This document shows positions 5,536 through 61,877 of a stretch of DNA of 64,000 nt, piece by piece. A program made the translations under genes and the position numbers. Within the stretch, counting starts at the first letter, position 1. Every line of letters starts with the position of its first letter. Location: IMG/VR virus record IMGVR_UViG_3300033997_000136, positions 62,001 through 126,000 of that record. One strand, written 5' to 3'. The notes below the pieces were generated by a model that saw only the letters and a list, made by a program, of their open reading frames with translations, was not told the origin of the DNA and did not search any database.

Positions 5536-6591
5536 ATGTTAGAAATGGCCCCAGTTATTGAAGCGCAAACATTAAAATATCAACAAATTACAGGTTATGG
5601 TTTGACATCAACTAGTGTTATGCACACTCATCCAGATATAGATTATTTTATAATCTATACACCAGGAACAGATCAAACCAGTCTCCAATTTTACACTACA
5701 GTTGACGGCAGCCCGATTTTCTTTGCGTTTGCTCAAGCAGATTATGCGGAGTTATCGACTATGCAAGTGCGGTGTATGGAGTATATTTCAACGTATGACG
5801 TTTGGGTGGTCTTAGGTAGAAACGGTGACGCCGCAATGCTTCGCATTTCAGATTTAGATTCGTTTCCAACTGTAGAAGTATTATGGCGTGGAACAATTGT
5901 TGGATTTGAAGCAGTATTACCTAGAAATATGATACACGGTGGATTTGGTTCCGATTTAATCTTTGTAACCAACGGTTCAAGTATTTATAGATTAATAATA
6001 ACTCCAACCAAACCAGGTTCACAATCACTAGATTTAACGTACGACAGCGTAATTGCAATTACAGGTAGTCGCGCAATAACTCATTTTCATCGTCTTGATG
6101 GTCAAGATATCATTTTAGCATATGGAACCGATACAAGTACCACAAATAAAGTAGTCATTATAAATGGTTACAGCGTTGTTGTGTCTGGTGGTATAAACCC
6201 AACCTCTAGTTTATTTATAGGTGCGTGGTATGATCCAAACTGGGACCGTATTTGTGTAATGCTTTCGAGTGGCGGATGGGCTTGTTTTTCAAGAACAACA
6301 GGTGCTATTCAATCTCTTGGTGGTGGTACGATTAGTATTAGTGTAAGTAGTCCAACCGCGTGTTTTTACGTAAAGAAAAGTAAAAAGTTATTTATTGCAA
6401 GCACAGGTGCAACGCGGTTAATTTATCAGTGTTCACTCGCATCACCCGCAGCATCAAGTGGTACACCCACACTAACTCTTGAACAGAGCTATGCAACAAC
6501 TGCAACTAATTTAGGTCTAGCTCCAGCTATATTCCTTGCTAGATTAAAACAATTAGTGTTTAGTGGTGGTCATTTATTAAAGTTTAAATAA
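5536..6591 (+). CDS. MLE-family beta-rich (beta-propeller-like) putative virion/tail accessory protein
   Basis: Starts MLE; GGAG RBS; repeated short beta-strand pattern, S/T/G-rich. Confidence 0.55.
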   Translation: MLEMAPVIEAQTLKYQQITGYGLTSTSVMHTHPDIDYFIIYTPGTDQTSLQFYTTVDGSPIFFAFAQADYAELSTMQVRCMEYISTYDVWVVLGRNGDAAMLRISDLDSFPTVEVLWRGTIVGFEAVLPRNMIHGGFGSDLIFVTNGSSIYRLIITPTKPGSQSLDLTYDSVIAITGSRAITHFHRLDGQDIILAYGTDTSTTNKVVIINGYSVVVSGGINPTSSLFIGAWYDPNWDRICVMLSSGGWACFSRTTGAIQSLGGGTISISVSSPTACFYVKKSKKLFIASTGATRLIYQCSLASPAASSGTPTLTLEQSYATTATNLGLAPAIFLARLKQLVFSGGHLLKFK

Positions 6592-6600
6592 GGTAACACT

Positions 6601-7182
6601 ATGCTGTATCATCCTTCACAACAACCGTATTGGCATCGGTTCGCTGGGTTTGACCCTGGTAGTCACAATTTAGGTGCAGCTATTGTTGATATTAACTTTG
6701 TTACATCTGAGGTGTACGTAGCCGATACACGCACCTTTGTCTCTGAGAAGTTTATTCAGATTCATCAGCGACATGATTTAACAATTTATGGTGATAGACA
6801 AGGACGTTTACTGAGTATCGAAGAGTTTGTGTATCGTTACTTATGCGACCATCAACCTGATGTGATTGCAAGTGAAGGTCCGTTTTTACAAATGAGTGTT
6901 GATGCTTATGCAACCCTTATTGAGTGTGTTGCAAGTATTCGAAACGCCACGCGTAACTATACACTTGAAATACCGCTTCTTACGTATCAACCACGTAATG
7001 TAAAATCAGCAGTCAATGCAAAAGGAACTGAGAAATCAGATATGTATGATGCAGTGTTAGTCTATCCAAAGATTAGTTTTGCGCCACACATTCGTTACGA
7101 GAACTTAACTGAACACTCCATTGATGCGATTGCAGTTGCTATTACTGCTGCACTTGATTGGGGGTTTAAACCACAACCGTAG
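6601..7182 (+). CDS. ruvC: Holliday junction resolvase RuvC-like
   Basis: GFDPGSHNLG, IASEGPF, VKSAV...KSDM and EHSIDAIAVA, i.e. the RuvC acidic catalytic pattern. Confidence 0.88.
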   Translation: MLYHPSQQPYWHRFAGFDPGSHNLGAAIVDINFVTSEVYVADTRTFVSEKFIQIHQRHDLTIYGDRQGRLLSIEEFVYRYLCDHQPDVIASEGPFLQMSVDAYATLIECVASIRNATRNYTLEIPLLTYQPRNVKSAVNAKGTEKSDMYDAVLVYPKISFAPHIRYENLTEHSIDAIAVAITAALDWGFKPQP

Positions 7183-7207
7183 AAGAAGGGGTAATTCCCT
7201 TCTTCTA
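7180..7207 (+). terminator. Hairpin terminator
   Basis: TAGAAGAAGGG-GTAATT-CCCTTCTTCTA plus T-rich tail. Confidence 0.7.
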
Positions 7208-7229
7208 TTTCCTTTTTCTTATGTAAGAA

Positions 7230-7700
7230 GTGAGTATCATTATGCCAACATTTTTACTATCATTGAAAAAAAACGCATTAAAAATTATTGCAGGGATTGC
7301 AGTAATCCTTTTACTTGGATGGTACATTCAATCGTTAAACCGAGATATTGCTACACTTCAAAGTGAAGTAACCTCAACAAAAGAAAAAGTCATTGATAGC
7401 AATGCCGTCGTGGAGTTTGAACAAAGCAAAGCGGCTATCACTGATACTGTAACAACCGCGACTGTGGAAGAGAAAGAAAAACTTACCACAGAAACTAAAA
7501 CCATCATTGTTGAAGTGGAGAAGACCGTTGAACGCATCATTCAATCTGCACCTGAAAAGAACCACGTGCCTGCTGTTACTCACACTGTTGTTAATGGGAT
7601 GTGGAACCAATACTGTTTACTTGCAAAAGACGACCCTGGCTGTACCGCCGAATCATCTCCTAAAGCCAGTGAAGGCAGTACCACCCCCACCTCGCGGTGA
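7230..7700 (+). CDS. Inner-membrane spanin (Rz-like); start may be ATG 7242
   Basis: N-terminal TM (IIAGIAVILLLGWYI), coiled-coil periplasmic part, C-terminal cysteines; overlapped by a lipoprotein gene. Confidence 0.75.
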   Translation: MSIIMPTFLLSLKKNALKIIAGIAVILLLGWYIQSLNRDIATLQSEVTSTKEKVIDSNAVVEFEQSKAAITDTVTTATVEEKEKLTTETKTIIVEVEKTVERIIQSAPEKNHVPAVTHTVVNGMWNQYCLLAKDDPGCTAESSPKASEGSTTPTSR

Positions 7701-7884
7701 ACTTGACAACCAACGTGCTGAAAAGATTATTGAAGCACTTGGTAAGTTGTACAACGCTCAAACGGCTGTAGTGGGTCAATGTAACATTCAGCTCAACGGC
7801 ATGGACGTATGGATACGTGAGGCCAAAAAAGAATTGGAACGGATTGATAAGAAAACCAATGAGCAAAAGTTGGACAACTTATGA
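7528..7884 (+). CDS. Outer-membrane lipoprotein spanin (Rz1-like)
   Basis: Lipobox LLLMG-C, proline-rich segment (VPP..PPPPR), overlaps the i-spanin in another frame; TTG 7528 has a GGAG RBS. Confidence 0.78.
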   Translation: MNASFNLHLKRTTCLLLLTLLLMGCGTNTVYLQKTTLAVPPNHLLKPVKAVPPPPRGELDNQRAEKIIEALGKLYNAQTAVVGQCNIQLNGMDVWIREAKKELERIDKKTNEQKLDNL

Positions 7885-8321
7885 TAGTTCTTGATTTATT
7901 AGACGAAGACTCCGCAGTCCCACTTGTTGAAGTCCCATGGGGTGTACCACTCATCCACTATGTGAACAAATGCGTAGGTGAATCGCTCTTAGGTTTATCT
8001 ACACGGATATGTGATGTTCGTCCTCTTCTTGAAACAAAAGATAGCCAATTGCAATTTGAAGTGCTTACACGTGAAATTGTAAAAGGTGATTTTTACACTG
8101 GTGAAATCTGGGCAAAGCTTCAGACAGAAACAAGTGAGGTTCAGAAGAAATCTACTGAAGTGACGTATCCACTTTTTACACCTAAGGCTATTATCTTGTT
8201 TGCATTGTTGTTTTTAGTTGTACTTAAGATGTCGTACGAGTACGCATTGACTGGACAATTGAATCTGGAGATACTAAGTAAGGTTATAGACGCACTCTTA
8301 TCGTTAGTTGGTTTAGGGTGA
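7881..8321 (+). CDS. Membrane protein next to the spanins (possible lysis accessory)
   Basis: C-terminal hydrophobic helix IILFALLFLVVL; translationally coupled to the o-spanin. Confidence 0.45.
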   Translation: MIVLDLLDEDSAVPLVEVPWGVPLIHYVNKCVGESLLGLSTRICDVRPLLETKDSQLQFEVLTREIVKGDFYTGEIWAKLQTETSEVQKKSTEVTYPLFTPKAIILFALLFLVVLKMSYEYALTGQLNLEILSKVIDALLSLVGLG

Positions 8322-8335
8322 TTCTATAATCTTAC

Positions 8336-8355
8336 AGATATACATTATCTCTATG
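8336..8355 (+). promoter_or_regulatory. Phage early promoter motif, copy 1
   Basis: AGATA-TACATTAT-CTCTA-TG; consensus ARAYMTAYATYA-N6-TG seen 8 times; resembles the phiKZ early TATATTAC element. Confidence 0.7.
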
Positions 8356-8383
8356 AGTTGATAACATAAACAAGGAAAGCTCG

Positions 8384-8695
8384 ATGGATTACAGTAAGTT
8401 AAATAAACGGCTTGTAAAGGCTGTTTCAAAAGGCTGTTCGTTTTCTGGTATGACCACGTTAGATATGGACTCCATGCGTATTATCATTGAAGTAGATGCA
8501 TCTGTAAACAAACACGCTGCTAAGAATGTGGGCGATTACTTCACTGGTGCAACTGCAAGTGCTATAGCGTCTGCCGCAGGGTTGCGTGGTAAGCTACGTG
8601 TTGTGTCATCTCCAACGTATTTGTTTGTTTGTGTGAAAGATGAGAAGGGTAAAACCACTCATGAGTTAAAATCATCGAACGAAGTAGTCGCATAG
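8384..8695 (+). CDS. Hypothetical early protein
   Basis: AAGGA RBS; monocistronic between promoter and terminator. Confidence 0.75.
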   Translation: MDYSKLNKRLVKAVSKGCSFSGMTTLDMDSMRIIIEVDASVNKHAAKNVGDYFTGATASAIASAAGLRGKLRVVSSPTYLFVCVKDEKGKTTHELKSSNEVVA

Positions 8696-8722
8696 AGAGA
8701 GGAGCTAATGCTCCTCTCTCTA
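8693..8722 (+). terminator. GC-apex hairpin terminator
   Basis: TAGAGAGAGGAGC-TAAT-GCTCCTCTCTCTA. Confidence 0.8.
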
Positions 8723-8742
8723 GCTTTATATACCTTTTCTAA

Positions 8743-8762: not shown

Positions 8763-8787
8763 GATTATAATTAAAAAGAGAAACACT

Positions 8788-11369: not shown

Positions 11370-12137
11370 ATGTTAGAACTTGTTCAGTTCGCAAAAGATA
11401 GACCACGATTTATTCAAAGTGGGTTAAAGTTGTATCTAGATGCATCAGACCAACGTTCTTACAACGGTGGTTCACAGTGGAATGATTTAAGTGGGAACAA
11501 CAACCACATTGCATTTACAGGACCTATTGTAAAAGAAGGCGCGTTTTTACATGGCAATGCTATTAATAGTTTTGGTCGAACTATTAATACGTTTGATTTA
11601 ACAAACAAACGTGCTGTCACTATTTTTTGTTTGATGAAACACCCTGACACAGGTACTGCTCCAGCTATTGATGGGATTGTGTACGAACACACCCCTGATT
11701 GGAACGCAGGTAATACCTATGGGTCAGTAACATACGGTGGTTTTGGTGTGGCTATGAATACAAGTGGTACTGCACATTTAGCACACGGTATTCATGCTCA
11801 GTATCAAGGTAATTCCCCTTACTCAGGTGTAAATATCTTATCACCAGATATAACCAAAGAAACACTGTACACGTTTATCCACGACACCAATCAAGTTACA
11901 CCACCTCAATCTAAAGCGTATATTAACGCTGTTGAATTTACAGGTGAAGTGGGAATACCTTACAATGGTATTTCTAATCAATCCATGGGAAATGATTATT
12001 TGTTCTTATGGACTCGTGGCGGTGTAGGGTCATTTAACGATACACGAATTGCGTTAATGTTGATTTATGATAGAGTCTTAAGTTTGTCGGAGATTCAATA
12101 CACGCGTTCTATCTTGTTAGATAGATTTACTTTGTAG
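11370..12137 (+). CDS. MLE-family LamG/concanavalin-like lectin domain protein (putative tail adhesin)
   Basis: Start reassigned to ATG 11370 (GAGG RBS); GLKLYLDA..SY.G..WNDLSGNNNH and IYDRVLSLSEI are typical of phage LamG domains. Confidence 0.75.
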   Translation: MLELVQFAKDRPRFIQSGLKLYLDASDQRSYNGGSQWNDLSGNNNHIAFTGPIVKEGAFLHGNAINSFGRTINTFDLTNKRAVTIFCLMKHPDTGTAPAIDGIVYEHTPDWNAGNTYGSVTYGGFGVAMNTSGTAHLAHGIHAQYQGNSPYSGVNILSPDITKETLYTFIHDTNQVTPPQSKAYINAVEFTGEVGIPYNGISNQSMGNDYLFLWTRGGVGSFNDTRIALMLIYDRVLSLSEIQYTRSILLDRFTL

Positions 12138-12163: not shown

Positions 12164-12688
12164 ATGTTAGAATTCTTCAAACCTTCCTACATTTCCAATA
12201 TAGACGATGCGTTACTTCATTCGTTTTCATTGCGAAATACATTACGTGATGAAAGGACTCCCACTATTTTAAGCGCACCTAAAGGTACGATTCGCTCTAC
12301 TTACTTAGATGTGAAAAGTGGAGATGTTAGCATACCAGGCGATACAACGGATGGTTATGATGTGTTAACAATAGGGTTCTGGTTGCGTTACAAAACGGTG
12401 AAAGGATTCAACACAAATTCATTATACACCCCCACAGATACCTTGTGGCATTTTTGGGTAATGGTGGTCACACGTGAAGAAGATAAATTGCGATTTGATT
12501 GTGTTATAGATAATGAGAGTGCGTTTACGCTCACATGGGATAAACCCAGAGAAAAAGCGTCTATGATGTTAAAACAGTTGTTTAATAAAAAAGATGTATC
12601 ACTTGCAATGTTGCGTGTGTATACGCAAGGAATGGTAATGTCTGATGCCCGTACGTTGTACGGAAAAGCTCAACGTGTAAAACCTTAG
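12164..12688 (+). CDS. MLE-family degenerate LamG-like protein
   Basis: LTIGFWLR, WHFWVMV and LRVYTQGM...ARTLY parallel the LamG strands of 12706. Confidence 0.55.
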   Translation: MLEFFKPSYISNIDDALLHSFSLRNTLRDERTPTILSAPKGTIRSTYLDVKSGDVSIPGDTTDGYDVLTIGFWLRYKTVKGFNTNSLYTPTDTLWHFWVMVVTREEDKLRFDCVIDNESAFTLTWDKPREKASMMLKQLFNKKDVSLAMLRVYTQGMVMSDARTLYGKAQRVKP

Positions 12689-12705: not shown

Positions 12706-13371
12706 ATGTTAGAAATAACGCGGCAACGAGATGCGTTTCAAATATTGGGAAAGAAATTAAAAGCACATTTCCCGTGTCGTAATTTGAATGATAGTAAAGG
12801 TGGTAGTCCTCTACTAGGTGATGGATTAGTTCAAACTGATTCAATTAATGTACAAAACCGTTCTATCACTATTCCATCTGCATCCATGCCACAGAATGTA
12901 TTTACGTTAGCATTTTGGATGAAGCACAATACTTCTCCAACGGGTGGTTGGGATAGACCGTTATTAATGCGGCAATCAAGACAGCCCGGAATGTGGTTGT
13001 ACGATGGAAACAACGCGCTTCACATGTCAACATTTTTAGTTGACACACAAGGCGGACAACATAATTGTACTCCAGACAACCCAAGTCTTCCTGAAAGTCA
13101 AGTTAATCCAAATGTCTGGGTACATGTGTTGTATCGATTTAGATACAATCCACAAAACGGTGTAAGCAGTATGTCACAGTTTATCAATGGTGTAAAGATA
13201 GGACATAGTGACTATCCATATGCACCACTAGCCGCAACGACTGATTTAACGATTAGCACGTGGTATCCATGTAGCATATCTGATATAAGAACGTATGGAC
13301 ATTACTTAACAGACATTGAATGTGGGTTAGTCTATGCGCAATCGAATAAGTTAAAACCGGTAGGGAGTTAA
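12706..13371 (+). CDS. MLE-family LamG/concanavalin-like protein
   Basis: FTLAFWMK, NVWVHV, FINGVK, ISDIRTYGHYLTDIE. Confidence 0.75.
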   Translation: MLEITRQRDAFQILGKKLKAHFPCRNLNDSKGGSPLLGDGLVQTDSINVQNRSITIPSASMPQNVFTLAFWMKHNTSPTGGWDRPLLMRQSRQPGMWLYDGNNALHMSTFLVDTQGGQHNCTPDNPSLPESQVNPNVWVHVLYRFRYNPQNGVSSMSQFINGVKIGHSDYPYAPLAATTDLTISTWYPCSISDIRTYGHYLTDIECGLVYAQSNKLKPVGS

Positions 13372-13373: not shown

Positions 13374-14096
13374 ATGTTAGAAGTAATGAGTGGCACTGAT
13401 TTACGTCCTATTGATAAAACGCTAATTCATGCTTCAGATTGGAGTTTTACACAATCTCAGTTTTTTACCTTAAGAGGATATTACGAACCTATGTTAGTAG
13501 GTCCTCACGGTCAGAAGCAAGTATTGCGTTCATTATCGGATGGATCTAATGGATGGACCGGTGGCTGGGATAGTTATCTTGTGAAAGCTAATCCTAATGT
13601 ATTACATCGTATCACATGTTGGGTTAAAATAAAAAATAAAGGTGGTGTTGTTCCAAACGGTGTGTTACGTGGGTATATTTACCTTGGTACAAACTGGTCA
13701 GGTAATGAACCAGTACAAACATTGCGCGATGGTTCAGATAATTTTAATCCTTATTTCCATGTCACCTTTGTAGATAACTTACCTGAAAACGAATGGTTAT
13801 TACTTGTAGGATATGTGCATCCTGTAAATACACCATTCGGTGGTCCTCGTAGTGAGTCTGGTATATGGCAATTATCCACAAATCAGAAAATAGTAAATGC
13901 ATGGGATGATTTTAGATTTAAATCTGGGACGACCAAAATCTTAAATCGTTGCTATCACTACTACGACCAGATTCCCGGAATCGAAGTATTGTACAACGAC
14001 CCACGAATTGATGTGTGTGATGGAAGTGAACCTACCATAACTCAGTTATTAAACGGGTATGGTGTCAATATGCGAAAACGTCCAATCGTAACTTAG
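13374..14096 (+). CDS. MLE-family carbohydrate-binding-like jelly-roll protein (phage tail-type domain)
   Basis: GGW, NPYF, LPENEWLLLVGYVHP and PRIDVCDGSEPTITQLL, a domain I recognise from phage tail proteins. Confidence 0.6.
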   Translation: MLEVMSGTDLRPIDKTLIHASDWSFTQSQFFTLRGYYEPMLVGPHGQKQVLRSLSDGSNGWTGGWDSYLVKANPNVLHRITCWVKIKNKGGVVPNGVLRGYIYLGTNWSGNEPVQTLRDGSDNFNPYFHVTFVDNLPENEWLLLVGYVHPVNTPFGGPRSESGIWQLSTNQKIVNAWDDFRFKSGTTKILNRCYHYYDQIPGIEVLYNDPRIDVCDGSEPTITQLLNGYGVNMRKRPIVT

Positions 14097-15935: not shown

Positions 15936-17297
15936 ATGACTATTAAAAATAATGCTGACAAACAGTACCGCGATTTAATTCAGTACATCTTAACGAACGG
16001 TCGTTTTAAAGGTGACCGAACTGGCGTAGGTACAAAGTCAGTCTTTGGTTACCAGATGCGTTTTGATTTAAGTAAAGACTTTCCATTGATTACAGGGAAG
16101 TTTACATCATTCAAAGCGTTAAAGGCGGAGAACATCTGGTTTGCGTCTGGTTCATGCAACAACAAAGACCTGAATGAATTAGGTGCTACCATTTGGGATG
16201 AATGGGATGTTGTTCCTGAGAACTTTATCACCTTAGTTAATCGTATTCGTTTAAATACCGAACATGAAACATTGTGGTTAGAACGCACCGGTCAGCTTAG
16301 TATTGAAATGGCTAACCTTAGAGAAATGCCAGCATTTACATTAGATAGCAACACAATAAAAGTCAAAGAAACACATTCAGCTAAAAACGTTCAGGGTTTA
16401 ACTGCACGTGAATTACTGATTAGCGGCCCTTTCACAGACAAATGTCTGGAAGACGGGTTCAGTGAGCATTTGATTAAATACAATCAACTACAACATCAAC
16501 TGTATAAGGAATCCATTGCGTTTTGTCAGGAACACAACATTCCATGGACAATCGGCGATTTAGGTCCGGTGTATGGTAAAATGTGGCGTTCATGGCCTTG
16601 TGTTGACGGTACAACTGTTGACCAGTTAAGTCGTGCGATAGCGACACTCAGAACAAATCCGACATCCCGTCGTATCATTGTTACTGGTTGGAATCCTGAG
16701 TTACTGCCAGAAGAAGGTCAGTCACACGCTGTTAACGTAGTTAACGGTAAACAAGTATTGCCACCATGTCATTTGTTGTTTCAGTTCTATGCTGAAGAGT
16801 TGACTGTTGGTGAACGAGATTGGTATGCTACTCGTCTGAAAAACAAAGACGGTGTGTACTATGATGAAGCAATGGAAATCGCTGCATTATTGAATGAACA
16901 CCAAGATAAATCTGAAGAAGAACGCGATGAGTTGTTGACAGCTCTTCTTAACAGACTGGGTGTGCCTAAACATCGTTTATCGTGTCAGATGTATATTCGG
17001 TCTAACGATGTGTTCTTAGGTACTCCGTTTAACATCGCTGGTTATGCTTTAGTAACGTTAATGGCTGCACAGGTAGTCGATATGGTTCCAGGTGATTTAG
17101 TGTACACCATTGGTGATGCACATATCTACACCAACCATATGGAACAGATTGAGCAGTATCTGGCACAAGAAACGTTTCCTTTACCTACAGTGAAGTTAAA
17201 TCCAAACGTAAAAGAAATAACTGATTTTACGATGGATGATATCGAACTCATTGGTTATCAGCATGGCGGTAAGATATCTGCACCTGTAGCTGTTTAG
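15936..17297 (+). CDS. thyA: Thymidylate synthase with two large in-frame insertions
   Basis: DRTGVGT, FPLIT, IWDEW, LGPVYG, SRR, LPPCH, RSNDVFLGTPFN, GDAHIY, C-terminal APVAV. Confidence 0.97.
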   Translation: MTIKNNADKQYRDLIQYILTNGRFKGDRTGVGTKSVFGYQMRFDLSKDFPLITGKFTSFKALKAENIWFASGSCNNKDLNELGATIWDEWDVVPENFITLVNRIRLNTEHETLWLERTGQLSIEMANLREMPAFTLDSNTIKVKETHSAKNVQGLTARELLISGPFTDKCLEDGFSEHLIKYNQLQHQLYKESIAFCQEHNIPWTIGDLGPVYGKMWRSWPCVDGTTVDQLSRAIATLRTNPTSRRIIVTGWNPELLPEEGQSHAVNVVNGKQVLPPCHLLFQFYAEELTVGERDWYATRLKNKDGVYYDEAMEIAALLNEHQDKSEEERDELLTALLNRLGVPKHRLSCQMYIRSNDVFLGTPFNIAGYALVTLMAAQVVDMVPGDLVYTIGDAHIYTNHMEQIEQYLAQETFPLPTVKLNPNVKEITDFTMDDIELIGYQHGGKISAPVAV

Positions 17298-17303: not shown

Positions 17304-17330
17304 AGAGAGAGGAGCATTGCTCCTCTCTCT
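17304..17330 (+). terminator. GC-apex hairpin terminator
   Basis: AGAGAGAGGAGC-ATT-GCTCCTCTCTCT. Confidence 0.8.
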
Positions 17331-17354: not shown

Positions 17355-18020
17355 GTGGATAGCGCAATAGAATTGTTAAGCTTCTTAGAAAAATTGCAAG
17401 ACAATTCAAAATACAAAGTAAACTGGTTTATTAAGTTAAGTGAGGCAGAAGATTTTCGAATTGTGTGTGGTGTGGATTCTGATTCAAAAGAACCTATCAT
17501 ACCTACTAATCTACATGCTGAACGAGTGATTGTCACACATGATTCTCGAATGTTTAATTTAGCCATAGTGGTGAGTAAAAATGCTGTTGATGAGGTTGAT
17601 GTTGACCCATTAAGATTTGGTGCATATTTGCTATTAAACGAACCAAAACCATTACCTAACGTTCCCAAAGTTGTGTTCTATGGTAACGGTGGTGGTATTG
17701 ATAATCATCTTGCTAACGCAACTGTAGTGCGTTATGACACCATCAACGAGTATGTTGCTGATTTAATAAAAGAGTTAGCGAGGTATAGTGAATGTAAGTT
17801 AGTATTCGGTATAAAGAATCCGAATCTACGTTGTCATGCGTATGATTCGCGCATCAACAAATTTGTGTGGATGTTAACTGCTGACCATATTGGCCCATCT
17901 CATATTACACCAAGTCAGTTTGTAAAATGGTGTTATTTTGAAGATGGTAGCGACCGCACTATGTCGTTAAATAAAGAAATCATTAAACAACAACTCAGTT
18001 GTTTAACAGCTAATAATTAG
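17355..18020 (+). CDS. Hypothetical protein (paralogue of 18278)
   Basis: Shares G.DS...E.I.P.N, D.RM.N and D..P.RFG motifs with 18278. Confidence 0.75.
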   Translation: MDSAIELLSFLEKLQDNSKYKVNWFIKLSEAEDFRIVCGVDSDSKEPIIPTNLHAERVIVTHDSRMFNLAIVVSKNAVDEVDVDPLRFGAYLLLNEPKPLPNVPKVVFYGNGGGIDNHLANATVVRYDTINEYVADLIKELARYSECKLVFGIKNPNLRCHAYDSRINKFVWMLTADHIGPSHITPSQFVKWCYFEDGSDRTMSLNKEIIKQQLSCLTANN

Positions 18021-18277: not shown

Positions 18278-18715
18278 ATGTCAGCATCATTAACTGAGCA
18301 ACAAAAGTTGGAAATCACAATTGAGTTTTGTGACTTTATTGAACAGCGTATAAAAAGTCGCAACACAATGGCAGCAACATTAACTGCTGCTATAAAACCA
18401 GAAGTGTTACCGTCTGTTCATTTGTTTGACTTTCGTTCTAATTTTGTAGACACTACTGTGATTGTTGGGATTGATTCTGTTACAGGCGAATCTATTCTAC
18501 CATCTAATTTTACACTAGATAACGTAAAGTTAGTATTCAGTAGCGACGAACGTATGGTTAACCATTTGATTATCATTGATAACGAAGATACTCAGATTAC
18601 CGCAATAGACGATATCCATCCAGATCGTTTTGGAACTGAGACTATGTTGTCTGGTTCTATACCTATCGGCGTCACTTGTGCTAGTGATTTGTTAAAAAGA
18701 ACAGTCGTTCCGTAG
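18278..18715 (+). CDS. Hypothetical protein (paralogue of 17355)
   Basis: AGGAG RBS; shared motifs. Confidence 0.75.
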   Translation: MSASLTEQQKLEITIEFCDFIEQRIKSRNTMAATLTAAIKPEVLPSVHLFDFRSNFVDTTVIVGIDSVTGESILPSNFTLDNVKLVFSSDERMVNHLIIIDNEDTQITAIDDIHPDRFGTETMLSGSIPIGVTCASDLLKRTVVP

Positions 18716-21454: not shown

Positions 21455-21487
21455 GACGGAGGGCAATTGCCCTCCTCTTTATTTTTT
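21449..21487 (+). repeat. 39-bp stop+terminator unit identical to 58590-58628
   Basis: GAATAAGACGGAGGGCAATTGCCCTCCTCTTTATTTTTT at both sites. Confidence 0.9.
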
Positions 21488-40090: not shown

Positions 40091-40891
40091 ATGAATGGTT
40101 CAGAAATGTTAGAGAAGTTACACGCTCGTTGTGAAAACAAAATTGACTTCAAGTCAGAATGGGAAAATGGCACTGGGTATTTAGATGGTGCTGTCCACAT
40201 GCAGTTGAAAGGTGCTGACGGTACAGTGTATGCATCTGTTGATGATCATCAGCGTAAAATCATTTTAGTCAAAACCTGTTTTGGTAACGTCGTTGTATTT
40301 CAACGTTATAAAGATGGAGCACATGGCGCAGTCGTAGGTAATGTACCTAGTGAGTTACGTACGTGGTTACCGACCGGTGCATGGTCTGCTGATGCGTTAG
40401 AGATGAACACCAATACGTATCAAGAACCAAGTCTCAATATCGGTATACGTTTAAATGTATTACGTAGAGATTTTGACCGTATCGGATACAAAACGTTACA
40501 GACGGTTAACGGTACACCAATGAAAAAGGTGATGGTATTGTTAGGTAACTCAACAGACACCGACGGCATCACTATCTCTGAAGGTATTGTCGTTCGAGAA
40601 GACAAAAATGGGCATTCATTTGCCATTGCATTACCTTACGGCGTGTGCATTGCTACAAACATCGTGGAAAAAGTAAACGAAACAGACGAGTATTATTATT
40701 CTACTTCGTCGTTACCGTTAAGTGCGACTAATTTAAAATATCGCACTGCTATTGAAAACATGTATGGTGTTCCGTATAGTGATGAATTACTTTTAGCTAT
40801 GCGTAGTGTCAAAACGTTAAAGACATTCATTCGCTCTAAACAAGAAGCGATGAAGTACATTTCTGAACGTTGTGAGTTTATAAACGATTAA
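40091..40891 (+). CDS. Hypothetical protein (related to 49884)
   Basis: T.F.N.VV.Q and VP.EL...LP...W motifs shared. Confidence 0.75.
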   Translation: MNGSEMLEKLHARCENKIDFKSEWENGTGYLDGAVHMQLKGADGTVYASVDDHQRKIILVKTCFGNVVVFQRYKDGAHGAVVGNVPSELRTWLPTGAWSADALEMNTNTYQEPSLNIGIRLNVLRRDFDRIGYKTLQTVNGTPMKKVMVLLGNSTDTDGITISEGIVVREDKNGHSFAIALPYGVCIATNIVEKVNETDEYYYSTSSLPLSATNLKYRTAIENMYGVPYSDELLLAMRSVKTLKTFIRSKQEAMKYISERCEFIND

Positions 40892-40962: not shown

Positions 40963-41397
40963 ATGTCTGGTATTGCTTTAAACAAACAATTGTTGATGAT
41001 TTTAAACAAAGTCAATGGTTATGAAAAATTACCTCTGTCTGAACACTTTGGTAGTCGTATGCAACGTACCATTTACATTAAAGGTGAAGGCGAAACGACG
41101 ATTGCTGTAATAGATTCAATTGTAGTGGGTGATTGGGCATTAATTTCTACACGCTACATCACTCACCCTGTTGACTCTTACTTAATTGTGGCGGTGAGTA
41201 GAGCAGAAATGTATCGTCGAATGGCATGTATTTCTGAATTTGATGCACCTCTTTATGTCACAGAAGAAGTAGCTAGACATGTGTTAAAACAAGTGACTTA
41301 TTCAGCATCGCAAAGTTTATGTTGGAGAATCGGTGAGTATGATTCATGTAAAACAACCGATGTGTTTTTAGAATTAATGTTAAGGGGAATCAAATGA
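40963..41397 (+). CDS. Hypothetical protein (paralogue of 46493)
   Basis: QL..IL....G...LP.....G...Q.T.Y...VVGD shared. Confidence 0.75.
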   Translation: MSGIALNKQLLMILNKVNGYEKLPLSEHFGSRMQRTIYIKGEGETTIAVIDSIVVGDWALISTRYITHPVDSYLIVAVSRAEMYRRMACISEFDAPLYVTEEVARHVLKQVTYSASQSLCWRIGEYDSCKTTDVFLELMLRGIK

Positions 41398-46492: not shown

Positions 46493-46906
46493 ATGACTAT
46501 TTTAGAACAACTAATGATTATCCTTGCTCAACTGCCTGGACATAAAACTTTACCTATTTATAACAAAATAGGTGCTATTCATCAATCTACTGTCTATGTC
46601 CCAGATACAACAATTGGAACTGAAGTTTTACTTGTAACCGCATGTGTTGTGGGTGACGCCAGTGTGTTCTGGATTCATGATGTGAAAATGAAAACACCAA
46701 ACATGTTGTTAGGTATTGGTAAACGCGAAGACTTTTATACAGTCGTTAAAGCGTTTCCTTCACTAGGTCAAGTATTGATTCGAACGAATGACGAGATTGA
46801 AACAATACTTGCAGAACTTAGTAAAGTGTATCACTCTGGAATGACAACAAAAGTAGGTTTGACCACACAAAGTGTCACTGACGAATTTTTAGCTCTTTTT
46901 CAATAA
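46493..46906 (+). CDS. Hypothetical protein (paralogue of 40963)
   Basis: Shared motifs. Confidence 0.75.
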   Translation: MTILEQLMIILAQLPGHKTLPIYNKIGAIHQSTVYVPDTTIGTEVLLVTACVVGDASVFWIHDVKMKTPNMLLGIGKREDFYTVVKAFPSLGQVLIRTNDEIETILAELSKVYHSGMTTKVGLTTQSVTDEFLALFQ

Positions 46907-48953: not shown

Positions 48954-48988
48954 GAGGAAGGGCAATTGCCCTTCCCTTTATTTTTTGT
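48943..48988 (+). repeat. Stop+terminator unit, 42/46 identical to 58585-58630
   Basis: AAGACGAATAAGAGGAAGGGCAATTGCCCTTCCCTTTATTTTTTGT. Confidence 0.8.
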
Positions 48989-49883: not shown

Positions 49884-50414
49884 ATGCCCACTTCAAAAGA
49901 TATACCTGCACAACAGTTTGTGAATCTTTTTGGTTCTACGCCATTTCAAAATATTGTTGTGATTCAAAAACGTTCTATCGCATCTCGCAGTGATGCGTTT
50001 GATAACGAACCCTACTACCGTGGTCTTACGTTAAGTAAAGGGTGGTTAGAACACGTTATTCTTTTATTAAAGAAACCGTACGTTGCTGCAATAGACGATA
50101 TTACAGCATATTCTATCCTTCGTGCAAGCGATTCAGATATCAAAGCATCACCGTGGGTGCTTACTCATGCGGCTATCGCTATAGTGACGCCATACGGCCC
50201 TGTGGTTGCGTATACAGTGGCTGGTGAGGAGATTATTCGTTCTCATGTACCAAATGAGTTAAAGTGCTACTTACCTTCTGAGTTTTGGGTAGGTGAATCA
50301 TTGAATTACTTCATCCCTAAACTTGCTGATTTCTGCAGACGAAGAGCATTGGATGTTGCAGCGGCAAAAAATCCAACATTAGAAACAATCAAAGAATCGG
50401 TAGGTAACTCGTGA
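49884..50414 (+). CDS. Hypothetical protein (related to 40091)
   Basis: Start moved to ATG 49884 (AAGGA). Confidence 0.7.
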   Translation: MPTSKDIPAQQFVNLFGSTPFQNIVVIQKRSIASRSDAFDNEPYYRGLTLSKGWLEHVILLLKKPYVAAIDDITAYSILRASDSDIKASPWVLTHAAIAIVTPYGPVVAYTVAGEEIIRSHVPNELKCYLPSEFWVGESLNYFIPKLADFCRRRALDVAAAKNPTLETIKESVGNS

Positions 50415-50728
50415 GTACATTAATTGTTGAAGCCTTTACCCATCAAGCCCTTTGGTCTGCAAAGTCTCCATTTCGAAATAGTCCGCTTGCAAAGAGCACA
50501 GACCGTTTTATAAACCACGTTCGTATCGAGTTAAACTTAGAAGGTGTGTATTACGTCATTACTAAGTTGATGAAGAAACAGTATGCAGGTGGTCGTCCTG
50601 CGGTGTTAAAACATTTAGCCATGTTAACTAAGGTTGGTACACTTACTCGTATCGAAAATGGTAAAGAAACAACGTGGATGATGATGGTCGATGTATCACA
50701 ACAACAAAATCAAGGAGCGACGTCATGA
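50411..50728 (+). CDS. Winged-helix-like protein, tandem paralogue 1
   Basis: LI..AF ... GGRPAVLKHLAMLTKVGTL. Confidence 0.55.
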   Translation: MSTLIVEAFTHQALWSAKSPFRNSPLAKSTDRFINHVRIELNLEGVYYVITKLMKKQYAGGRPAVLKHLAMLTKVGTLTRIENGKETTWMMMVDVSQQQNQGATS

Positions 50729-51195
50729 AAGACATTATTTTAACAGCCTTTGCAGACCATGCAAAGAAAGCGTTGGGTGAAGGTCAAGCTCAATTAAGTA
50801 AACCAGATGTGGTACGCAATACCGTCAAAGCAACACCTGGGTATGTCGTTGTTACTCCACAAGGTGACATTGTAGTACAAAAAGCATTTAAAGATATTGT
50901 GGATGTGATTCGTACTGTATTAGGTAAAGATGTACCCGGCGGTAAACCTGCAGTCAGTCGTGTGGTTGATACCTTAGTACGACAAAACGTGTTTAAACGT
51001 GTTGTTTGCAATTTAACGGGCGGTACGTTGCTTGAGTACAAGTTACCTAACAACGTCAAGGTAGATGTACTTGAGTATGCTACGCATCGAATTGCAGCAA
51101 ATCAATTAGCAAAACAACAAATGCGTTCGTCATTAGGTCAGTTGACCTCAAAGGTGATTCGAACCGCTAAACAATTTATCCGAGGTAGTGAATGA
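50725..51195 (+). CDS. Winged-helix-like protein, tandem paralogue 2
   Basis: IILTAF ... GGKPAVSRVVDTLVRQNVF; start ATG 50725. Confidence 0.55.
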   Translation: MKDIILTAFADHAKKALGEGQAQLSKPDVVRNTVKATPGYVVVTPQGDIVVQKAFKDIVDVIRTVLGKDVPGGKPAVSRVVDTLVRQNVFKRVVCNLTGGTLLEYKLPNNVKVDVLEYATHRIAANQLAKQQMRSSLGQLTSKVIRTAKQFIRGSE

Positions 51196-51605
51196 AAGAG
51201 TTAATTTTAAAAGCATTTAAGTCGCGATTAGCGGGTGTGCTGCAAACACGTTTACTTAAACAGTCACCGTTTTATCATGAAGTAAATGGTAGTCCAGTTG
51301 CAGTGATTGCATTAGATTTAAATGGTATCTTCTACGGTGCGACTGAGCAGAAACCAAATGAGCGTGTTCGGTACATTCCAGGTGGTCGTCCAGCGCTTTT
51401 AAACCATCTAAAGAAGTTAGTAAACGATGGCGTATTGATTGACCAAGGAACCAATTGGGGTCCTCGGTATTGGGCGTACAAATTTACTGGTGAAGAGTTG
51501 GAAACTATCGTTGAAGAAACGAAGCGTCCACGTGAATTTGCTGAAGTATTCTTTCCAGTTAAAACTGAAGAGGTGAATCAACATGAAACGAGTGAACAGC
51601 TCTAA
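51192..51605 (+). CDS. Winged-helix-like protein, tandem paralogue 3
   Basis: LILKAF ... GGRPALLNHLKKLVNDGVL. Confidence 0.55.
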   Translation: MKELILKAFKSRLAGVLQTRLLKQSPFYHEVNGSPVAVIALDLNGIFYGATEQKPNERVRYIPGGRPALLNHLKKLVNDGVLIDQGTNWGPRYWAYKFTGEELETIVEETKRPREFAEVFFPVKTEEVNQHETSEQL

Positions 51606-58595: not shown

Positions 58596-58628
58596 GACGG
58601 AGGGCAATTGCCCTCCTCTTTATTTTTT
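58590..58628 (+). repeat. 39-bp stop+terminator unit identical to 21449-21487; lies between convergent genes
   Basis: Exact match. Confidence 0.9.
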
Positions 58629-59426: not shown

Positions 59427-59537
59427 TTGACTATCCTCATACATTCAGTGGGCTATACGATGATTATTTTTAAATGCTGACGTTATCTTACGAGACCTTT
59501 ACGCATTTATTTCGAATTAAGACAAAGGACGTTTGCT

Positions 59538-60266
59538 ATGAGCACACCCATTATTTCTGTTCGTCTACGTGACTATGTGGAGAGCACTGTAGGTATACTT
59601 ACATGCATCGATGCTAAACGTATTGTCAGAAAAATAAAAGAAGATATACAACAGGACTATGTAGAACAATTGTCAGTATCGTTAACTGGGTACAACCGTT
59701 GGACTCGTAGTTTTTTAAATGCTGTTGTAGATGAGATGTATAAACAATTTGAGTGGACAAAACGTCCGTCGTATCATTTACAGTTTCATCATCAATTAAT
59801 ACAATCGTTAGCTACGCTTGCAGCAATGCAAACACCACATCCCCATACACTTCATGCAAATATGTTGTCTGTAATAAAAGAAGACATGGAAGAAATATGG
59901 TGTGAAGATATTCCATTCTATTTCTGTGTGGATGAACATCATTTATCTATGCATCCTGTATTAGTAGATGATGATGAACTAGGTGCAATGACATGCGCTT
60001 ATGTCAATAGTGTTGTGTTTCAAGGTGTAGATGGAATTGATGTTCATGTAGTTCCTGATGTGGTCTTGTTTCACAAAGGTCAACTCTACAGTTATTTAGC
60101 TGTACATGCATTAGTTTATGAAAAACACCTAACAGAACACCACAAACTTTTACTTCGTTGGTTCCAATCGATTTTAAAGCATCTGGAATTGACGGAGGAC
60201 TACTTTAAAGTAGAACTAACACATATACTGCCTGATGGTGGTAACTTAGCACAGGAGCGCGTATGA
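59538..60266 (+). CDS. Protein with N-terminal STAS-like (DUF4325-type) domain
   Basis: DAKRI..KI......VSLTG....RSFLNAVV..MY. Confidence 0.5.
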   Translation: MSTPIISVRLRDYVESTVGILTCIDAKRIVRKIKEDIQQDYVEQLSVSLTGYNRWTRSFLNAVVDEMYKQFEWTKRPSYHLQFHHQLIQSLATLAAMQTPHPHTLHANMLSVIKEDMEEIWCEDIPFYFCVDEHHLSMHPVLVDDDELGAMTCAYVNSVVFQGVDGIDVHVVPDVVLFHKGQLYSYLAVHALVYEKHLTEHHKLLLRWFQSILKHLELTEDYFKVELTHILPDGGNLAQERV

Positions 60267-60796
60267 GGCGTTTTGATGCATTAGAAACATTCTTCAATAA
60301 ACATTTAGCGGATAATGACTTCAGTCCATTAAATGTATTGTCTGAACAAGACTTGTATATCCAACCCGGTGAATACGTTGCTCACTATTTATACAACCTT
60401 ACTCAGAAAAAAGAACTCGTTTCTTTTATGAAAGAACATTACCCTGAAGTTGTTGCTGAGATGGAAAATCATTGTGTAGATGTCATGAGTACCTTCTGCA
60501 CTTTATTCACTGCACTTCGTACAGGTGTTGAACACGATGTTGGTTTCTATGGTTACTGTGCTAAACGCATTTCGCCGAATGAAGGTGATGGTCGTTCTTA
60601 CAATCAGTTAACCAAACAGTGTCAGCTTTGGTTTTTTAATAACAGAGAAAAAGCCAAGACGATGTTTGAAGCGTTGGAATTTAAAGACGCACTATTTGAC
60701 GATGCTCACGTAGACGAGTTTGTTTTATTAGTAAGTTATTCTACGTATGCAAATAACGTGATTAAATTAAATCATGTATGGGTATGTGGTCCTTAG
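60263..60796 (+). CDS. Hypothetical protein
   Basis: AGGAG RBS. Confidence 0.7.
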   Translation: MRRFDALETFFNKHLADNDFSPLNVLSEQDLYIQPGEYVAHYLYNLTQKKELVSFMKEHYPEVVAEMENHCVDVMSTFCTLFTALRTGVEHDVGFYGYCAKRISPNEGDGRSYNQLTKQCQLWFFNNREKAKTMFEALEFKDALFDDAHVDEFVLLVSYSTYANNVIKLNHVWVCGP

Positions 60797-60805
60797 ACAG
60801 AATAG

Positions 60806-60839
60806 AAGATACAGAGGAGCTGATGCTCCTCTGTATCTT
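60806..60839. terminator. Bidirectional GC-apex hairpin terminator
   Basis: AAGATACAGAGGAGC-TGAT-GCTCCTCTGTATCTT between convergent genes. Confidence 0.85.
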
Positions 60840-60843
60840 TATA

Positions 60844-61395
60844 TCACCAATTTAAACTCAAACGAGGACTTTCTGATTGAAGTGTAATCTCTCCACGTTT
60901 TTGAAGACGTTTAAGATTCTTCTCACATTGTTCATCCGTAAACTTTGTATCACTATTCCAAGCCCATTGCAACAACCCTTGTCGCTGTCGTGTATTGCAA
61001 GATTTATCGCCTACCTTACACTTCGCTTGAACTTGTGCGTTGTGTCTAGCAACAAAACTTCTCCAACGACCAATCTGCCATTCATCTTCTTTTGGGATAC
61101 GACGACCTAAGTAATAAAGACAATACCAACCAAACCATCCGTAGGGTGAGTCCTTAGTAAGCCACCCATTCTTCTTCCACTCAGATAATCCTTGTCGAGA
61201 CTTTACACCGTAGTAATTAATGCTTTCATCAGGTTCATCGTTAGGTCCTAACACCTTAGGAAGTTTATACCACGACGCAGGTAATCCTTTTATTGCGTTG
61301 ATGTACTTCCCTTCAAAGACACCCATCTCTAACATTTCAAGAGGTGTATAACTTGGTGCAAAACGAGGGTCCCACACGCTATCTTTTTTTATCAT
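60844..61395 (-). CDS. Conserved uncharacterised Trp-rich protein (TP.EML..GVF / PYGWF.WYC.YY.GRR / RQ.LLQWA family)
   Basis: Distinctive motif set; function unknown to me. Confidence 0.8.
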   Translation of the reverse strand: MIKKDSVWDPRFAPSYTPLEMLEMGVFEGKYINAIKGLPASWYKLPKVLGPNDEPDESINYYGVKSRQGLSEWKKNGWLTKDSPYGWFGWYCLYYLGRRIPKEDEWQIGRWRSFVARHNAQVQAKCKVGDKSCNTRQRQGLLQWAWNSDTKFTDEQCEKNLKRLQKRGEITLQSESPRLSLNW

Positions 61396-61412
61396 TACGT
61401 AACCCTCGTTTG

Positions 61413-61877
61413 TTAATGTAGGTAAACACTCTTTGGATTTGAATCATTCACATGATTTCCATTAGTTAATGTAAAGAAAAACATTGTAAATGGTTTCTGA
61501 ATCAAACCAGACGAATGTGTTTGGTCAGCATAGCCGGTACTGGTATGGGTATAAGTTGAACCACCTATTGTGATTTCAGTAAAATCGATAGGGGTGTTTC
61601 TATGATCACCATCGACAGCAATCTCCAGCGTTGTTGAAAGGGCACCAGATGCGGTTTCATGCATGATACCGATAGTTAAGACTTTCATCCTGGGTCGAAT
61701 GTACAGAGTTTTGTTAGAAAACCCTTGTGGTGGTGAGTTTAAAACCCATTCTTCATAATTATGGATTCTGTAGGTTAAAAAATCATTCCACCAAAAATTA
61801 GATGCTCGTTCAAATGCGATAACAGCTTTTAAATCTAACCCGCCATTTTTTGTAAAAGAAGAACTAAACTCTAACAT
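61413..61877 (-). CDS. MLE-family beta-rich putative virion accessory protein
   Basis: Starts MLEF; lies in the late minus-strand operon near the tail-fibre genes. Confidence 0.55.
   Translation of the reverse strand: MLEFSSSFTKNGGLDLKAVIAFERASNFWWNDFLTYRIHNYEEWVLNSPPQGFSNKTLYIRPRMKVLTIGIMHETASGALSTTLEIAVDGDHRNTPIDFTEITIGGSTYTHTSTGYADQTHSSGLIQKPFTMFFFTLTNGNHVNDSNPKSVYLH

What the first reader, a model, noticed from the sequence alone, without database searches (positions are those of the whole stretch)
5536..61877. Six otherwise unrelated lectin/beta-rich proteins share an N-terminal Met-Leu-Glu tag: candidate plug-in adhesin display system
Seen: 5536 (MLEMAP, propeller-like), 11370 (MLELVQ, LamG), 12164 (MLEFFK, degenerate LamG), 12706 (MLEITR, LamG), 13374 (MLEVMS, CBM-like jelly roll) and 61877 minus (MLEFSS) all start M-L-E-hydrophobic. 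Five use the identical codons ATGTTAGAA and the sixth ATGTTAGAG. None of the ~90 other accessory genes starts this way. The genes sit at three separate loci in late-gene contexts. Each protein looks like a bare receptor-binding domain with no fibre shaft, trimerisation coil or signal peptide. Inference: the 4-residue tag is a common anchor that docks interchangeable glycan-binding modules onto a shared virion scaffold (tail sheath, baseplate or fibre), so any captured domain becomes displayed once it gains the tag. The nucleotide conservation leaves open a translational or RNA signal instead.
Basis: partly seen in the sequence, partly recalled or inferred. Interest (0 to 1): 0.8.

Follow-up and report, generated by a model that had tools for sequence, protein, structure and literature searches.

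The report
Shared Met-Leu-Glu start on phage tail-accessory proteins
In an uncultured phiKZ-like giant phage, at least nine small sugar-binding-type proteins encoded near the portal, baseplate and tail-fibre genes all begin Met-Leu-Glu; related phages keep this start at the protein level, so it looks like a real short N-terminal signature, but its job is untested.

Summary
All six window genes start ATG-TTA-GAA/G. Three more MLE genes lie just past the right end of the window, in the baseplate/fibre module. That makes 9 of about 165 genes sampled over about 131 kb of the genome.

The identical codons add nothing, because TTA and GAA are the default codons here. In related phages the same starts are spelled TTG-GAG, TTG-GAA and CTT-GAG, so the constraint is on the peptide, not the RNA.

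"Otherwise unrelated" is only partly true. Three of the proteins are LamG jelly rolls in tandem. The gene at 13374 has a paralogue outside the window. The propeller (5536), the orphan at 61877 and two further families are unrelated to these by sequence.

After collapsing paralogues, and allowing for having searched all residue pairs, the excess is moderate: permutation P is 0.004 to 0.015, and it is not significant under the harshest collapse.

Orthologues in four related phages keep M-L/I-E at 23-50% body identity. More distant phages have MLH or MIN instead.

In a confident AlphaFold model of the 11370 protein, residues 1-4 are the only disordered part.

The docking-tag idea fits the context: the genes lie near homologues of the phiKZ portal (gp129), gp130 and the gp131-like fibres. 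It remains untested. Paralogy plus chance, or an effect on translation or protein stability, are still open.

The parts
5536..6591 (+). g5536, 351 aa, starts MLEM. A stand-alone seven-bladed beta-propeller.
   Evidence: The ESM Atlas holds its model (pTM 0.74), which matches WD40/lactonase propellers at TM 0.66-0.73 over residues about 10-351. It has no homologue other than itself among 5.8 billion proteins. It is absent from the syntenic site in the related phage L012. There is no Pfam or PHROG hit.
11370..12137 (+). LamG-A, 255 aa, starts MLEL. A ConA-like/LamG jelly roll with a 16-residue N-terminal extension.
   Evidence: AlphaFold2 with a 27-sequence alignment gives pLDDT 89.6 and pTM 0.90. 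Residues 1-4 score below 50 and the first strand is residues 19-24. Foldseek matches lectin-like jelly rolls in the PDB and LamG proteins of cyanophages, including proteins of phage S-PM2 named virion structural proteins. Orthologues start MLEL (L013, 82% identity), MLEL (L011), MLEM (L012) and MLHI (L022). The homologue P0007 hits Pfam Laminin_G_3 at 4e-9.
12164..12688 (+). LamG-C, 174 aa, starts MLEF. A short LamG_3-fold protein.
   Evidence: The Atlas feature score to Laminin_G_3 clusters is 0.96 and the structural TM is 0.67-0.74. An internally deleted 83-aa remnant in another phage (P0011/L035) still starts MLEF, spelled ATGTTAGAG.
12706..13371 (+). LamG-B, 221 aa, starts MLEI.
   Evidence: Pfam Laminin_G_3 at 1.4e-9, 38.7 bits against a cutoff of 27.6. 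Orthologues at only 28-29% identity start MLEL in L011 and L012. A more distant homologue, P0015, starts MINN.
13374..14096 (+). Family D, 240 aa, starts MLEV. A beta-rich domain of the fibre-tip type.
   Evidence: Residues 44-240 match (32% identity, 4e-15) the C-terminal end of a 1042-aa 'virion structural protein' of Vibrio phage F86 that lies next to tail-fibre genes. It has a paralogue, g7, a 429-aa MLES protein just outside the window (BLASTP 7e-21). [quoted passage not shown] A link to LamG is not demonstrable by profile comparison.
61413..61877 (-). g61877, 154 aa, starts MLEF. An orphan of unknown fold inside the fibre/endolysin module.
   Evidence: It matches only itself in the protein database. 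The Atlas model has low confidence (pTM 0.20). There is no hit among PDB sequences. The LamG family profile does not hit it (E = 3).
1560..4292 (+). Context: homologue of the phiKZ gp129 portal protein, 910 aa.
   Evidence: tblastn matches phiPA3 gp148 and relatives at about 28% identity. phiPA3 gp148 is annotated as similar to phiKZ gp129. gp129 is the portal in the phiKZ structural atlas (PMC13250141).
62276..62911 (-). Context: endolysin with GH108 and PG_binding_3 domains.
   Evidence: Pfam 7.7e-19 and 1e-8, and PHROG 315.
63498..64000 (-). Context: the C-terminal end of an 847-aa gp131-like fibre protein that runs off the window.
   Evidence: The gene call on the full contig is L030:16716-19258. 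It hits PHROG 2163, 13857 and 11355, which are tail, fibre and virion families.
15936..17297 (+). Context: thymidylate synthase directly after the LamG cluster, which shows the neighbourhood is not purely structural.
   Evidence: PHROG 160 at 1.5e-98.

Best explanation
Met-Leu-Glu, usually followed by a hydrophobic residue, is a short N-terminal signature selected at the protein level in one clade of phiKZ-like jumbo phages.

It marks a class of small, single-domain, lectin-like or beta-rich accessory proteins:
- LamG jelly rolls;
- a fibre-tip-type domain;
- a seven-bladed propeller;
- three families of unknown fold.

Their genes sit in movable clusters near the portal, the gp130-type outer baseplate protein and the gp131-type fibres.

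Part of the sharing is common descent: there are three tandem LamG paralogues and the 13374/g7 pair. The same start also occurs on families that show no detectable relationship.

Inferred, not shown: the exposed tip (retained Met, Leu, Glu, then a hydrophobic residue) is read by one common partner. The most likely partner is a pocket or sheet edge on the peripheral baseplate or the fibres, or else a shared assembly factor. That would let bare binding domains be loaded onto the tail without an anchor domain of their own.
For: Shown:
- 9 MLE starts among about 165 genes, against 1.4 expected. Permutation P is 0/2000 for all genes and 8/2000 after collapsing to 6 families.
- There are no MLE starts among about 50 genes of the head, inner-body and tail-tube regions and the replication region.
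- Peptide conservation with synonymous spelling: ATGTTGGAG, ATGTTGGAA, ATGCTTGAG and ATGTTAGAG in L011, L012 and L035.
- Orthologues keep M-L/I-E at low body identity: LamG-B at 28%, LamG-A at 45-49%, and the g8 family at 23% (MIEL), with MIEF in L035.
- LamG subfamilies so diverged that profile comparison barely links them (E 3e-4 to 0.5) all keep MLE.
- Unrelated MLE/MIE families lie side by side in several phages. LamG and g8-family genes are adjacent in L022 and L035.
- In the confident model of the 11370 protein, residues 1-4 are the only disordered part.
- Context: homologues of portal gp129, gp130, gp131-like fibres, and DUF4376/DUF1353 chaperone-like genes. [quoted passage not shown]
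- Apart from the 9 nt and the Shine-Dalgarno box, no nucleotide is conserved, and folding energy around the start does not differ from other genes.
Against: - No evidence shows that any of these proteins is in the virion.
- No partner has been identified, and no complex could be modelled.
- After the harshest collapse of paralogues (4 families) the excess is not significant. MFK is also over-represented, 5 seen against 1.0 expected.
- Three of the nine genes (g5536, g61877, g9) are orphans, so conservation of their starts cannot be checked. The start of g9 is ambiguous.
- More distant homologues start MLH, MIN or MAG, so the tripeptide is dispensable for the fold and perhaps for the function.
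- The fourth residue is N or S in two of the new members.
- About 80 kb of the contig was not sampled.
- The LamG cluster is flanked by a RuvC-like gene and a thymidylate synthase gene.
Confidence: 0.4

Rival explanations
1. Descent plus coincidence. An ancestral LamG-type gene that happened to start MLE was duplicated in tandem. The tip is kept for a reason local to that family. The propeller, g61877, g8 and g9 match by chance, helped by general N-terminal composition bias.
For: - Four of the six window genes are adjacent. Three are LamG_3 by Pfam, Atlas or AlphaFold, and they share core and C-terminal motifs in alignment.
- 13374 and g7 are paralogues.
- Collapsing to 4 families removes significance.
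- Other starts are also over-dispersed: MFK is seen 5 times against 1.0 expected.
- Three members are orphans.
Against: - With 5-6 families the corrected P is 0.004-0.015.
- The g8 family, unrelated to LamG by sequence, keeps M-L/I-E in three phages and sits next to LamG genes in two of them.
- All nine genes lie in two tail-related neighbourhoods.
- A propeller cannot be a LamG paralogue.
Confidence: 0.27
2. An effect on expression. The first codons or residues tune initiation or early elongation (a nascent-peptide or 'ramp' effect) for a co-regulated set of genes, with no role in the finished protein.
For: The motif is at the very start, and codons 2-3 are A/T-rich. From general knowledge, residues 2-5 can change protein yield strongly in bacteria. 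Several MLE genes begin a transcription unit just after a terminator.
Against: - The relatives use G-richer synonymous codons (TTG, GAG, CTT), so the amino acids are what is kept.
- The most highly expressed structural genes sampled do not use this start.
- Folding energy around the start does not differ from other genes (P = 0.10).
Confidence: 0.12
3. N-terminal processing or stability. Leu at position 2 blocks removal of the initiator Met, and Glu at position 3 is either a cleavage point for a Glu-specific phage protease or part of a stabilising or destabilising N-terminus.
For: From general knowledge: Met-Leu N-termini keep their Met; the T4 and phiKZ maturation proteases cut after Glu, in L/I-x-E and S/A/G-x-E motifs respectively. 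M-L-E loosely resembles hydrophobic-x-E.
Against: The known protease substrates are head and inner-body proteins with longer propeptides. Here the phiKZ_IP-type inner-body genes do not start MLE. Removing three residues has no evident purpose. Nothing here could test cleavage.
Confidence: 0.08
4. An RNA or DNA signal. AUGUUAGAR would be a translational operator or a recombination joint for exchanging gene cassettes.
For: Eight of the nine genes in this genome share the identical 9 nt.
Against: - The identity is what codon bias predicts.
- Relatives vary only at synonymous positions, including a change of Leu codon family (CTT).
- There is no conserved flanking sequence or structure.
- There is no Rfam hit.
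Confidence: 0.04

Closest known systems
phiKZ gp131-gp135 paralogue family (fibre base on the outer baseplate)
   Same: Several proteins with different distal domains, including the seven-bladed propeller of gp131, share one N-terminal part. That part docks them under gp130 on the peripheral baseplate (PMC13250141). This phage has such proteins of 682 and 847 aa, and a gp130 homologue, next to the MLE genes.
   Different: Their shared part is a folded domain of about 200-250 aa plus a helix bundle. The MLE proteins have no such domain: none of the six window proteins hit any PHROG family, including 2163/13857. They share only 3-4 residues.
Chimallivirus DUF7941 module proteins (Goslar gp22/gp23 and relatives)
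   Same: A common N-terminal module carries carbohydrate-binding, hydrolase or LRR domains and is proposed to hang from the peripheral baseplate. Assembly is predicted to work by a disordered stretch adding a strand to a neighbour's sheet (PMC13742148).
   Different: The shared element there is a whole domain plus a linker, and filament formation was seen by electron microscopy. Here no DUF7941 was found in the proteins scanned, and the shared element is a tripeptide.
Short conserved N-terminal anchors of secondary receptor-binding proteins, and T-even gp38-type adhesins (recalled from memory, not checked here)
   Same: Stand-alone binding proteins without a shaft of their own attach through their N-terminus to another fibre protein.
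   Different: Those anchors are tens of residues long and are recognisable as homologous sequence. Attachment has been shown experimentally.
Recognition of N-terminal tetrapeptides, such as IAP-binding motifs and N-degron readers (recalled from memory; an analogy of mechanism only)
   Same: Three or four free N-terminal residues on otherwise unrelated proteins are enough for specific docking to one reader domain.
   Different: These are eukaryotic or proteolytic systems. No reader is known in phages.
T4 capsid targeting sequence and Glu-specific prohead proteases (recalled from memory)
   Same: A short N-terminal peptide shared by unrelated proteins directs them into a virion compartment, and cleavage follows a Glu.
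   Different: It is about 10 residues long, sits on head-internal proteins and is removed after targeting. The MLE proteins are lectin-like and tail-associated by context.

Membership tests
Pfam Laminin_G_3 / ConA-like lectin jelly roll | Profile hit above the gathering score. | tested here: met
   12706 scores 38.7 bits against a cutoff of 27.6. Homologues P0019, P0015, P0007 and L011:295-999 also pass. 11370, 12164 and 13374 themselves do not pass.
Pfam Laminin_G_3 / ConA-like lectin jelly roll | Two-sheet jelly-roll fold. | tested here: met
   The 11370 model (pLDDT 89.6) matches 336 PDB chains and 400 BFVD models at E <= 0.001. For 12164 the Atlas TM is 0.67-0.74. 13374 was not modelled, so its membership is open.
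Seven-bladed beta-propeller (as in the C-terminal domain of phiKZ gp131) | Propeller fold. | tested here: met
   The Atlas model of g5536 matches WD40/lactonase propellers at TM 0.66-0.73. A direct comparison with gp131 was not possible.
phiKZ gp131-135 fibre family | The shared gp131-like N-terminal domain (PHROG 2163/13857). | tested here: not met
   None of the six window MLE proteins hits any PHROG family, nor do g7, g8 or g9. The 682-aa and 847-aa neighbours hit these families strongly.
DUF7941 module proteins | The DUF7941 domain. | tested here: inconclusive
   Pfam scans of the MLE proteins returned no such domain. I could not confirm that this model is in the Pfam copy used.
Secreted proteins or lipoproteins | N-terminal signal peptide. 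| tested here: not met
   Read directly from the sequences: there is an acidic residue at position 3 and no hydrophobic stretch of 12 or more residues in the first 30.
   The phage is uncultured and comes from subsurface and soil metagenomes. There are no proteomics data and no multimer prediction was available.
Propeptides cleaved by a prohead protease | Cleavage after Glu in a head protein. | not testable with these tools
   Only the loose pattern hydrophobic-x-E is present. The context is tail rather than head.

The most novel reading that the evidence does not exclude
A free N-terminal tetrapeptide, (f)Met-Leu-Glu-hydrophobic, is by itself a sufficient docking tag. One reader site on the peripheral baseplate or fibres of this jumbo-phage clade would recognise it, so any captured binding domain (LamG, propeller or other) would be displayed once it gained three codons. 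The variants MIE, MIN and MLH in related phages would then be co-evolved tag and reader pairs. The M-V-V-R-F-K start shared by a NUDIX enzyme and its neighbours in a related contig would be a second tag of the same kind for another destination.
Probability: 0.2. Interest if true: 0.85.

Novelty: new variant of a known kind. Interest (0 to 1): 0.55.

Why it matters
Jumbo phages of the phiKZ type carry large, poorly resolved clouds of peripheral tail proteins. How so many different binding domains are mounted is an open question in the two recent virion structures (PMC13250141, PMC13742148).

A three- to four-residue start shared by unrelated lectin-like proteins, and kept at the protein level across related phages, would be the smallest assembly or recognition signal described for phage tails. 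It would explain how accessory binding modules can be gained, lost and moved so freely.

It also gives a simple sequence rule for finding such modules in metagenomic phages. If it turns out to be descent plus chance, the result is still a clean description of a fast-evolving LamG cassette array next to the portal gene.

Tried and rejected
- **No close relatives in the curated collections.** Megablast of the LamG cluster against cultured phages found nothing. Single-protein scans of IMG/VR found only the source contig. The JGI metagenome scan with the g8 family found only self.
- **Word-indexed protein search.** g5536 and g61877 matched only themselves, and g11370 matched itself plus one close relative, P0036.
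- **First AlphaFold run.** 12706 with a 4-sequence alignment failed (pLDDT 37).
- **Homology among the subfamilies.** BLASTP among the six shows no similarity. Leave-one-out HMMs and hhalign between subfamilies are weak. Homology of all four tandem genes therefore rests on fold and shared motifs, not on statistics. I dropped the idea that g61877 is a degenerate LamG (a shared VLTIG pentapeptide) because the family profile does not hit it.
- **PDB sequence searches.** g5536, g61877, g7, g8 and g9 gave nothing useful.
- **Reads and contigs from four other runs.** They gave only short fragments of close relatives and no information on the starts.
- **RNA element idea.** There is no Rfam family and no tRNA, and no conserved flank or unusual folding.
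- **Strain variation.** All other contigs carrying g5536 are 100% identical. An apparent 236-aa variant of 13374 was only a different gene call.
- **Walking the whole genome.** About 80 kb of the 213-kb contig is unsampled: contig positions 1-6.3 kb, 49-57.5 kb and 154-213 kb.

Full report
**What the window is.** The 64-kb window is positions 62,001-126,000 of a 213-kb viral contig (IMGVR_UViG_3300033997_000136). The same phage occurs in several subsurface and soil metagenomes, on contigs up to 305 kb. It is a distant phiKZ-like jumbo phage.
- The 910-aa protein at 1560-4292 matches phiPA3 gp148 at about 28% identity. That protein is annotated as the phiKZ gp129 homologue, and gp129 is the portal (PMC13250141).
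- Elsewhere on the contig are phiKZ inner-body proteins, a gp91-like protein, a tail tube protein and head-tail joining proteins.
- No cultured phage is close at the DNA level.

**The observation.** All six starts are as described. Each has a Shine-Dalgarno-like box.
- Five of the six cannot start further upstream.
- At 11370 an ATG lies four codons upstream, but the GAGG box and the orthologues point to the MLE start.
- No other window gene starts MLE. The in-frame MLE strings at 40106 and 61335 are internal.
- The identical codons are not informative. TTA is 45% of all Leu codons and 10 of 11 Leu codons at position 2, and GAA is 73% of Glu codons.

**What the six proteins are.**
- **12706** passes Pfam Laminin_G_3.
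- **12164** has the same fold by the ESM Atlas (score 0.96, TM about 0.7).
- **11370** gave a confident AlphaFold model once I had gathered 27 homologous sequences (pLDDT 89.6). It is a ConA-like jelly roll whose best viral matches are cyanophage LamG proteins, some of them named virion structural proteins.
- **13374** is a different beta-rich domain. Its residues 44-240 match the C-terminal end of a 1042-aa protein of Vibrio phage F86 that lies beside tail-fibre genes.
- **5536** is a stand-alone seven-bladed propeller.
- **61877** is an orphan of unknown fold.

BLASTP finds no similarity among the six. Profile comparisons between the LamG subfamilies are weak. Alignment nevertheless shows shared LamG core and C-terminal motifs in the tandem genes. 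So "otherwise unrelated" is half right: there are three LamG proteins, one fibre-tip-type domain, one propeller and one unknown.

**Relatives.** A profile search of 1.8 billion representative proteins, followed by context look-ups, found fragments of several related phages.
- **L013** (77% DNA identity) has MLELTQF.
- **L011** has three tandem LamG genes starting MLEC, MLEL and MLEL, spelled ATGTTGGAG, ATGTTAGAA and ATGTTGGAA.
- **L012**, a syntenic 27-kb contig, has LamG-A MLEM spelled ATGCTTGAG and LamG-B MLEL.
- **L035** has an internally deleted remnant of 12164 that still starts MLEF. It is followed by a gene of another family that starts MIEF.

LamG-B orthologues are only 28-29% identical in the body and LamG-A orthologues 45-49%. 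The variation lies at synonymous positions, including a change of Leu codon family. This places the constraint on the peptide.

More distant homologues do not keep it. They start MLHI and MINN (L022), MINN (L023) and MAGR (P0007). P0023 has a 115-aa N-terminal domain instead.

**Beyond the window.** I sampled further parts of the same genome using a repeated terminator motif and by walking from known genes. About 131 kb and 165 genes are now covered. Three more MLE genes appeared, all just right of the window.
- **g7** (429 aa, MLES) lies between a DUF4376 gene and a DUF1353 gene (chaperone-like), downstream of a 909-aa tail fibre. Its N-terminal half is a paralogue of 13374 (E 7e-21).
- **g9** (172 aa, MLEF if the second ATG, which has the GGTGG box, is used) and **g8** (195 aa, MLEN) follow a 411-aa gene. 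That gene is the homologue of phiKZ gp130.
- The g8 family has homologues starting MIEL (L012), MIEF (L035) and MINN (L022). In L022 and L035 it sits directly beside LamG genes.

In phiKZ the fibre attachment sites lie beneath gp130. [quoted passage not shown] This phage has gp131-like proteins of 682 and 847 aa. The window's last ORF is the tail end of the 847-aa protein.

None of about 50 genes in the head, inner-body, tail-tube and replication regions starts MLE. The propeller gene is missing from the syntenic place in L012, so it is a lineage-specific insertion that nevertheless carries the motif.

**How much is chance.**
- From the marginal frequencies at positions 2 and 3, 1.4 MLE starts are expected and 9 are seen. 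MST is seen 6 times against 5.5 expected, so it is ordinary. MFK is seen 5 times against 1.0, so it is also high.
- A permutation test takes the most extreme residue pair in each shuffle, which corrects for having looked at all pairs. It gives 0/2000 for all genes, 8/2000 after collapsing paralogues to six families, and 30/2000 for five families. If LamG and family D are merged and g9 is dropped, LE is no longer the top pair.
- The statistics alone are therefore moderate. The case rests on three things together: the excess, the conservation in orthologues and in very diverged paralogues, and the co-location of unrelated MLE/MIE families in tail-related neighbourhoods.

**RNA signal.** Outside the nine nucleotides and the Shine-Dalgarno box nothing is conserved. 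Predicted folding around the start is like that of other genes. There is no Rfam family. Together with the synonymous spellings in relatives, this makes an RNA or DNA signal unlikely.

**Mechanism.** Shown: a peptide-level motif on bare binding-type domains, exposed in the one good model (residues 1-4 are the only ones below pLDDT 50), encoded near peripheral tail genes.

Inferred: it is read by a common partner. The closest known arrangements are two.
- The gp131-135 family shares a folded N-terminal domain that docks under gp130.
- In the chimallivirus DUF7941 module proteins, a common module carries carbohydrate-binding domains and is predicted to assemble by strand addition from a disordered segment.

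The MLE proteins are members of neither family. They lack both domains. Docking by three or four free N-terminal residues has precedents elsewhere in biology (from memory: IAP-binding motifs, N-degron readers) but none in phage tails.

I rate a real, selected, cross-family motif at about 0.7, and docking or assembly recognition as its function at about 0.35-0.4 overall. The rivals are descent plus coincidence (0.27), an effect on expression (0.12), processing or stability (0.08) and a nucleic-acid signal (0.04).

**Verdict.** If true it would be a new, minimal variant of the known theme of a shared N-terminal anchor with a variable binding domain.

Noticed in passing
L022:8406-10925 and L023:2415-2876 (contigs of related phages, not the window): Four adjacent genes start M-[V/T]-V-R-F-K with synonymous codon differences and unrelated bodies; one is a NUDIX hydrolase. 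A RyR-domain gene in another contig starts MTIRFK. This is a second short N-terminal tag shared by unrelated proteins in this phage group. No such start occurs in the window.
   Followed up: partly
window 21458-21475, 48959-48972, 58599-58616: A conserved terminator hairpin, GGAGGGCAATTGCCCTCC plus a T-run, preceded by GAATAAGA. Further copies lie elsewhere on the contig and on a second contig of the same phage.
   Followed up: partly
window 8694-8721 and 17304-17330: A second hairpin family, AGAGAGAGGAGC-loop-GCTCCTCTCTCT, at the ends of two gene blocks.
   Followed up: no
window 15936-17297 (+): The thymidylate synthase is 453 aa, against 286 aa in the related phage L012. BLAST aligns it in three blocks, which implies two in-frame insertions of roughly 100-120 aa.
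   Followed up: no
window 63498-64000 (-): What looks like a 156-aa ORF is the C-terminal end of an 847-aa gp131-like fibre protein cut by the window edge.
   Followed up: yes
window 62276-62911 (-): An endolysin (GH108 plus PG_binding_3) sits inside the fibre module, two genes upstream of the MLE gene at 61877.
   Followed up: no
window 50411-51605 (+); also 40963-41397 with 46493-46906, and 17355-18020 with 18278-18715: Small paralogue sets detectable by BLASTP (E 3e-5 to 2e-6). None of them shares a start tripeptide.
   Followed up: no
window 10837, 18034, 44165, 62962; L030:16269: MFK is the second over-represented start: 5 seen against 1.0 expected. It occurs on unrelated small proteins, two of which have membrane-like N-termini.
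   Followed up: no
L012:1082-2264 compared with window 4367-7182: In L012 the DUF7208 gene is followed directly by the RuvC-like gene and then by an MIEL gene of the g8 family. In the window phage an 80-aa gene and the MLEM propeller are inserted before the RuvC-like gene, and the g8 gene sits 70 kb away by the gp130 homologue. The tagged genes therefore move around the genome.
   Followed up: partly
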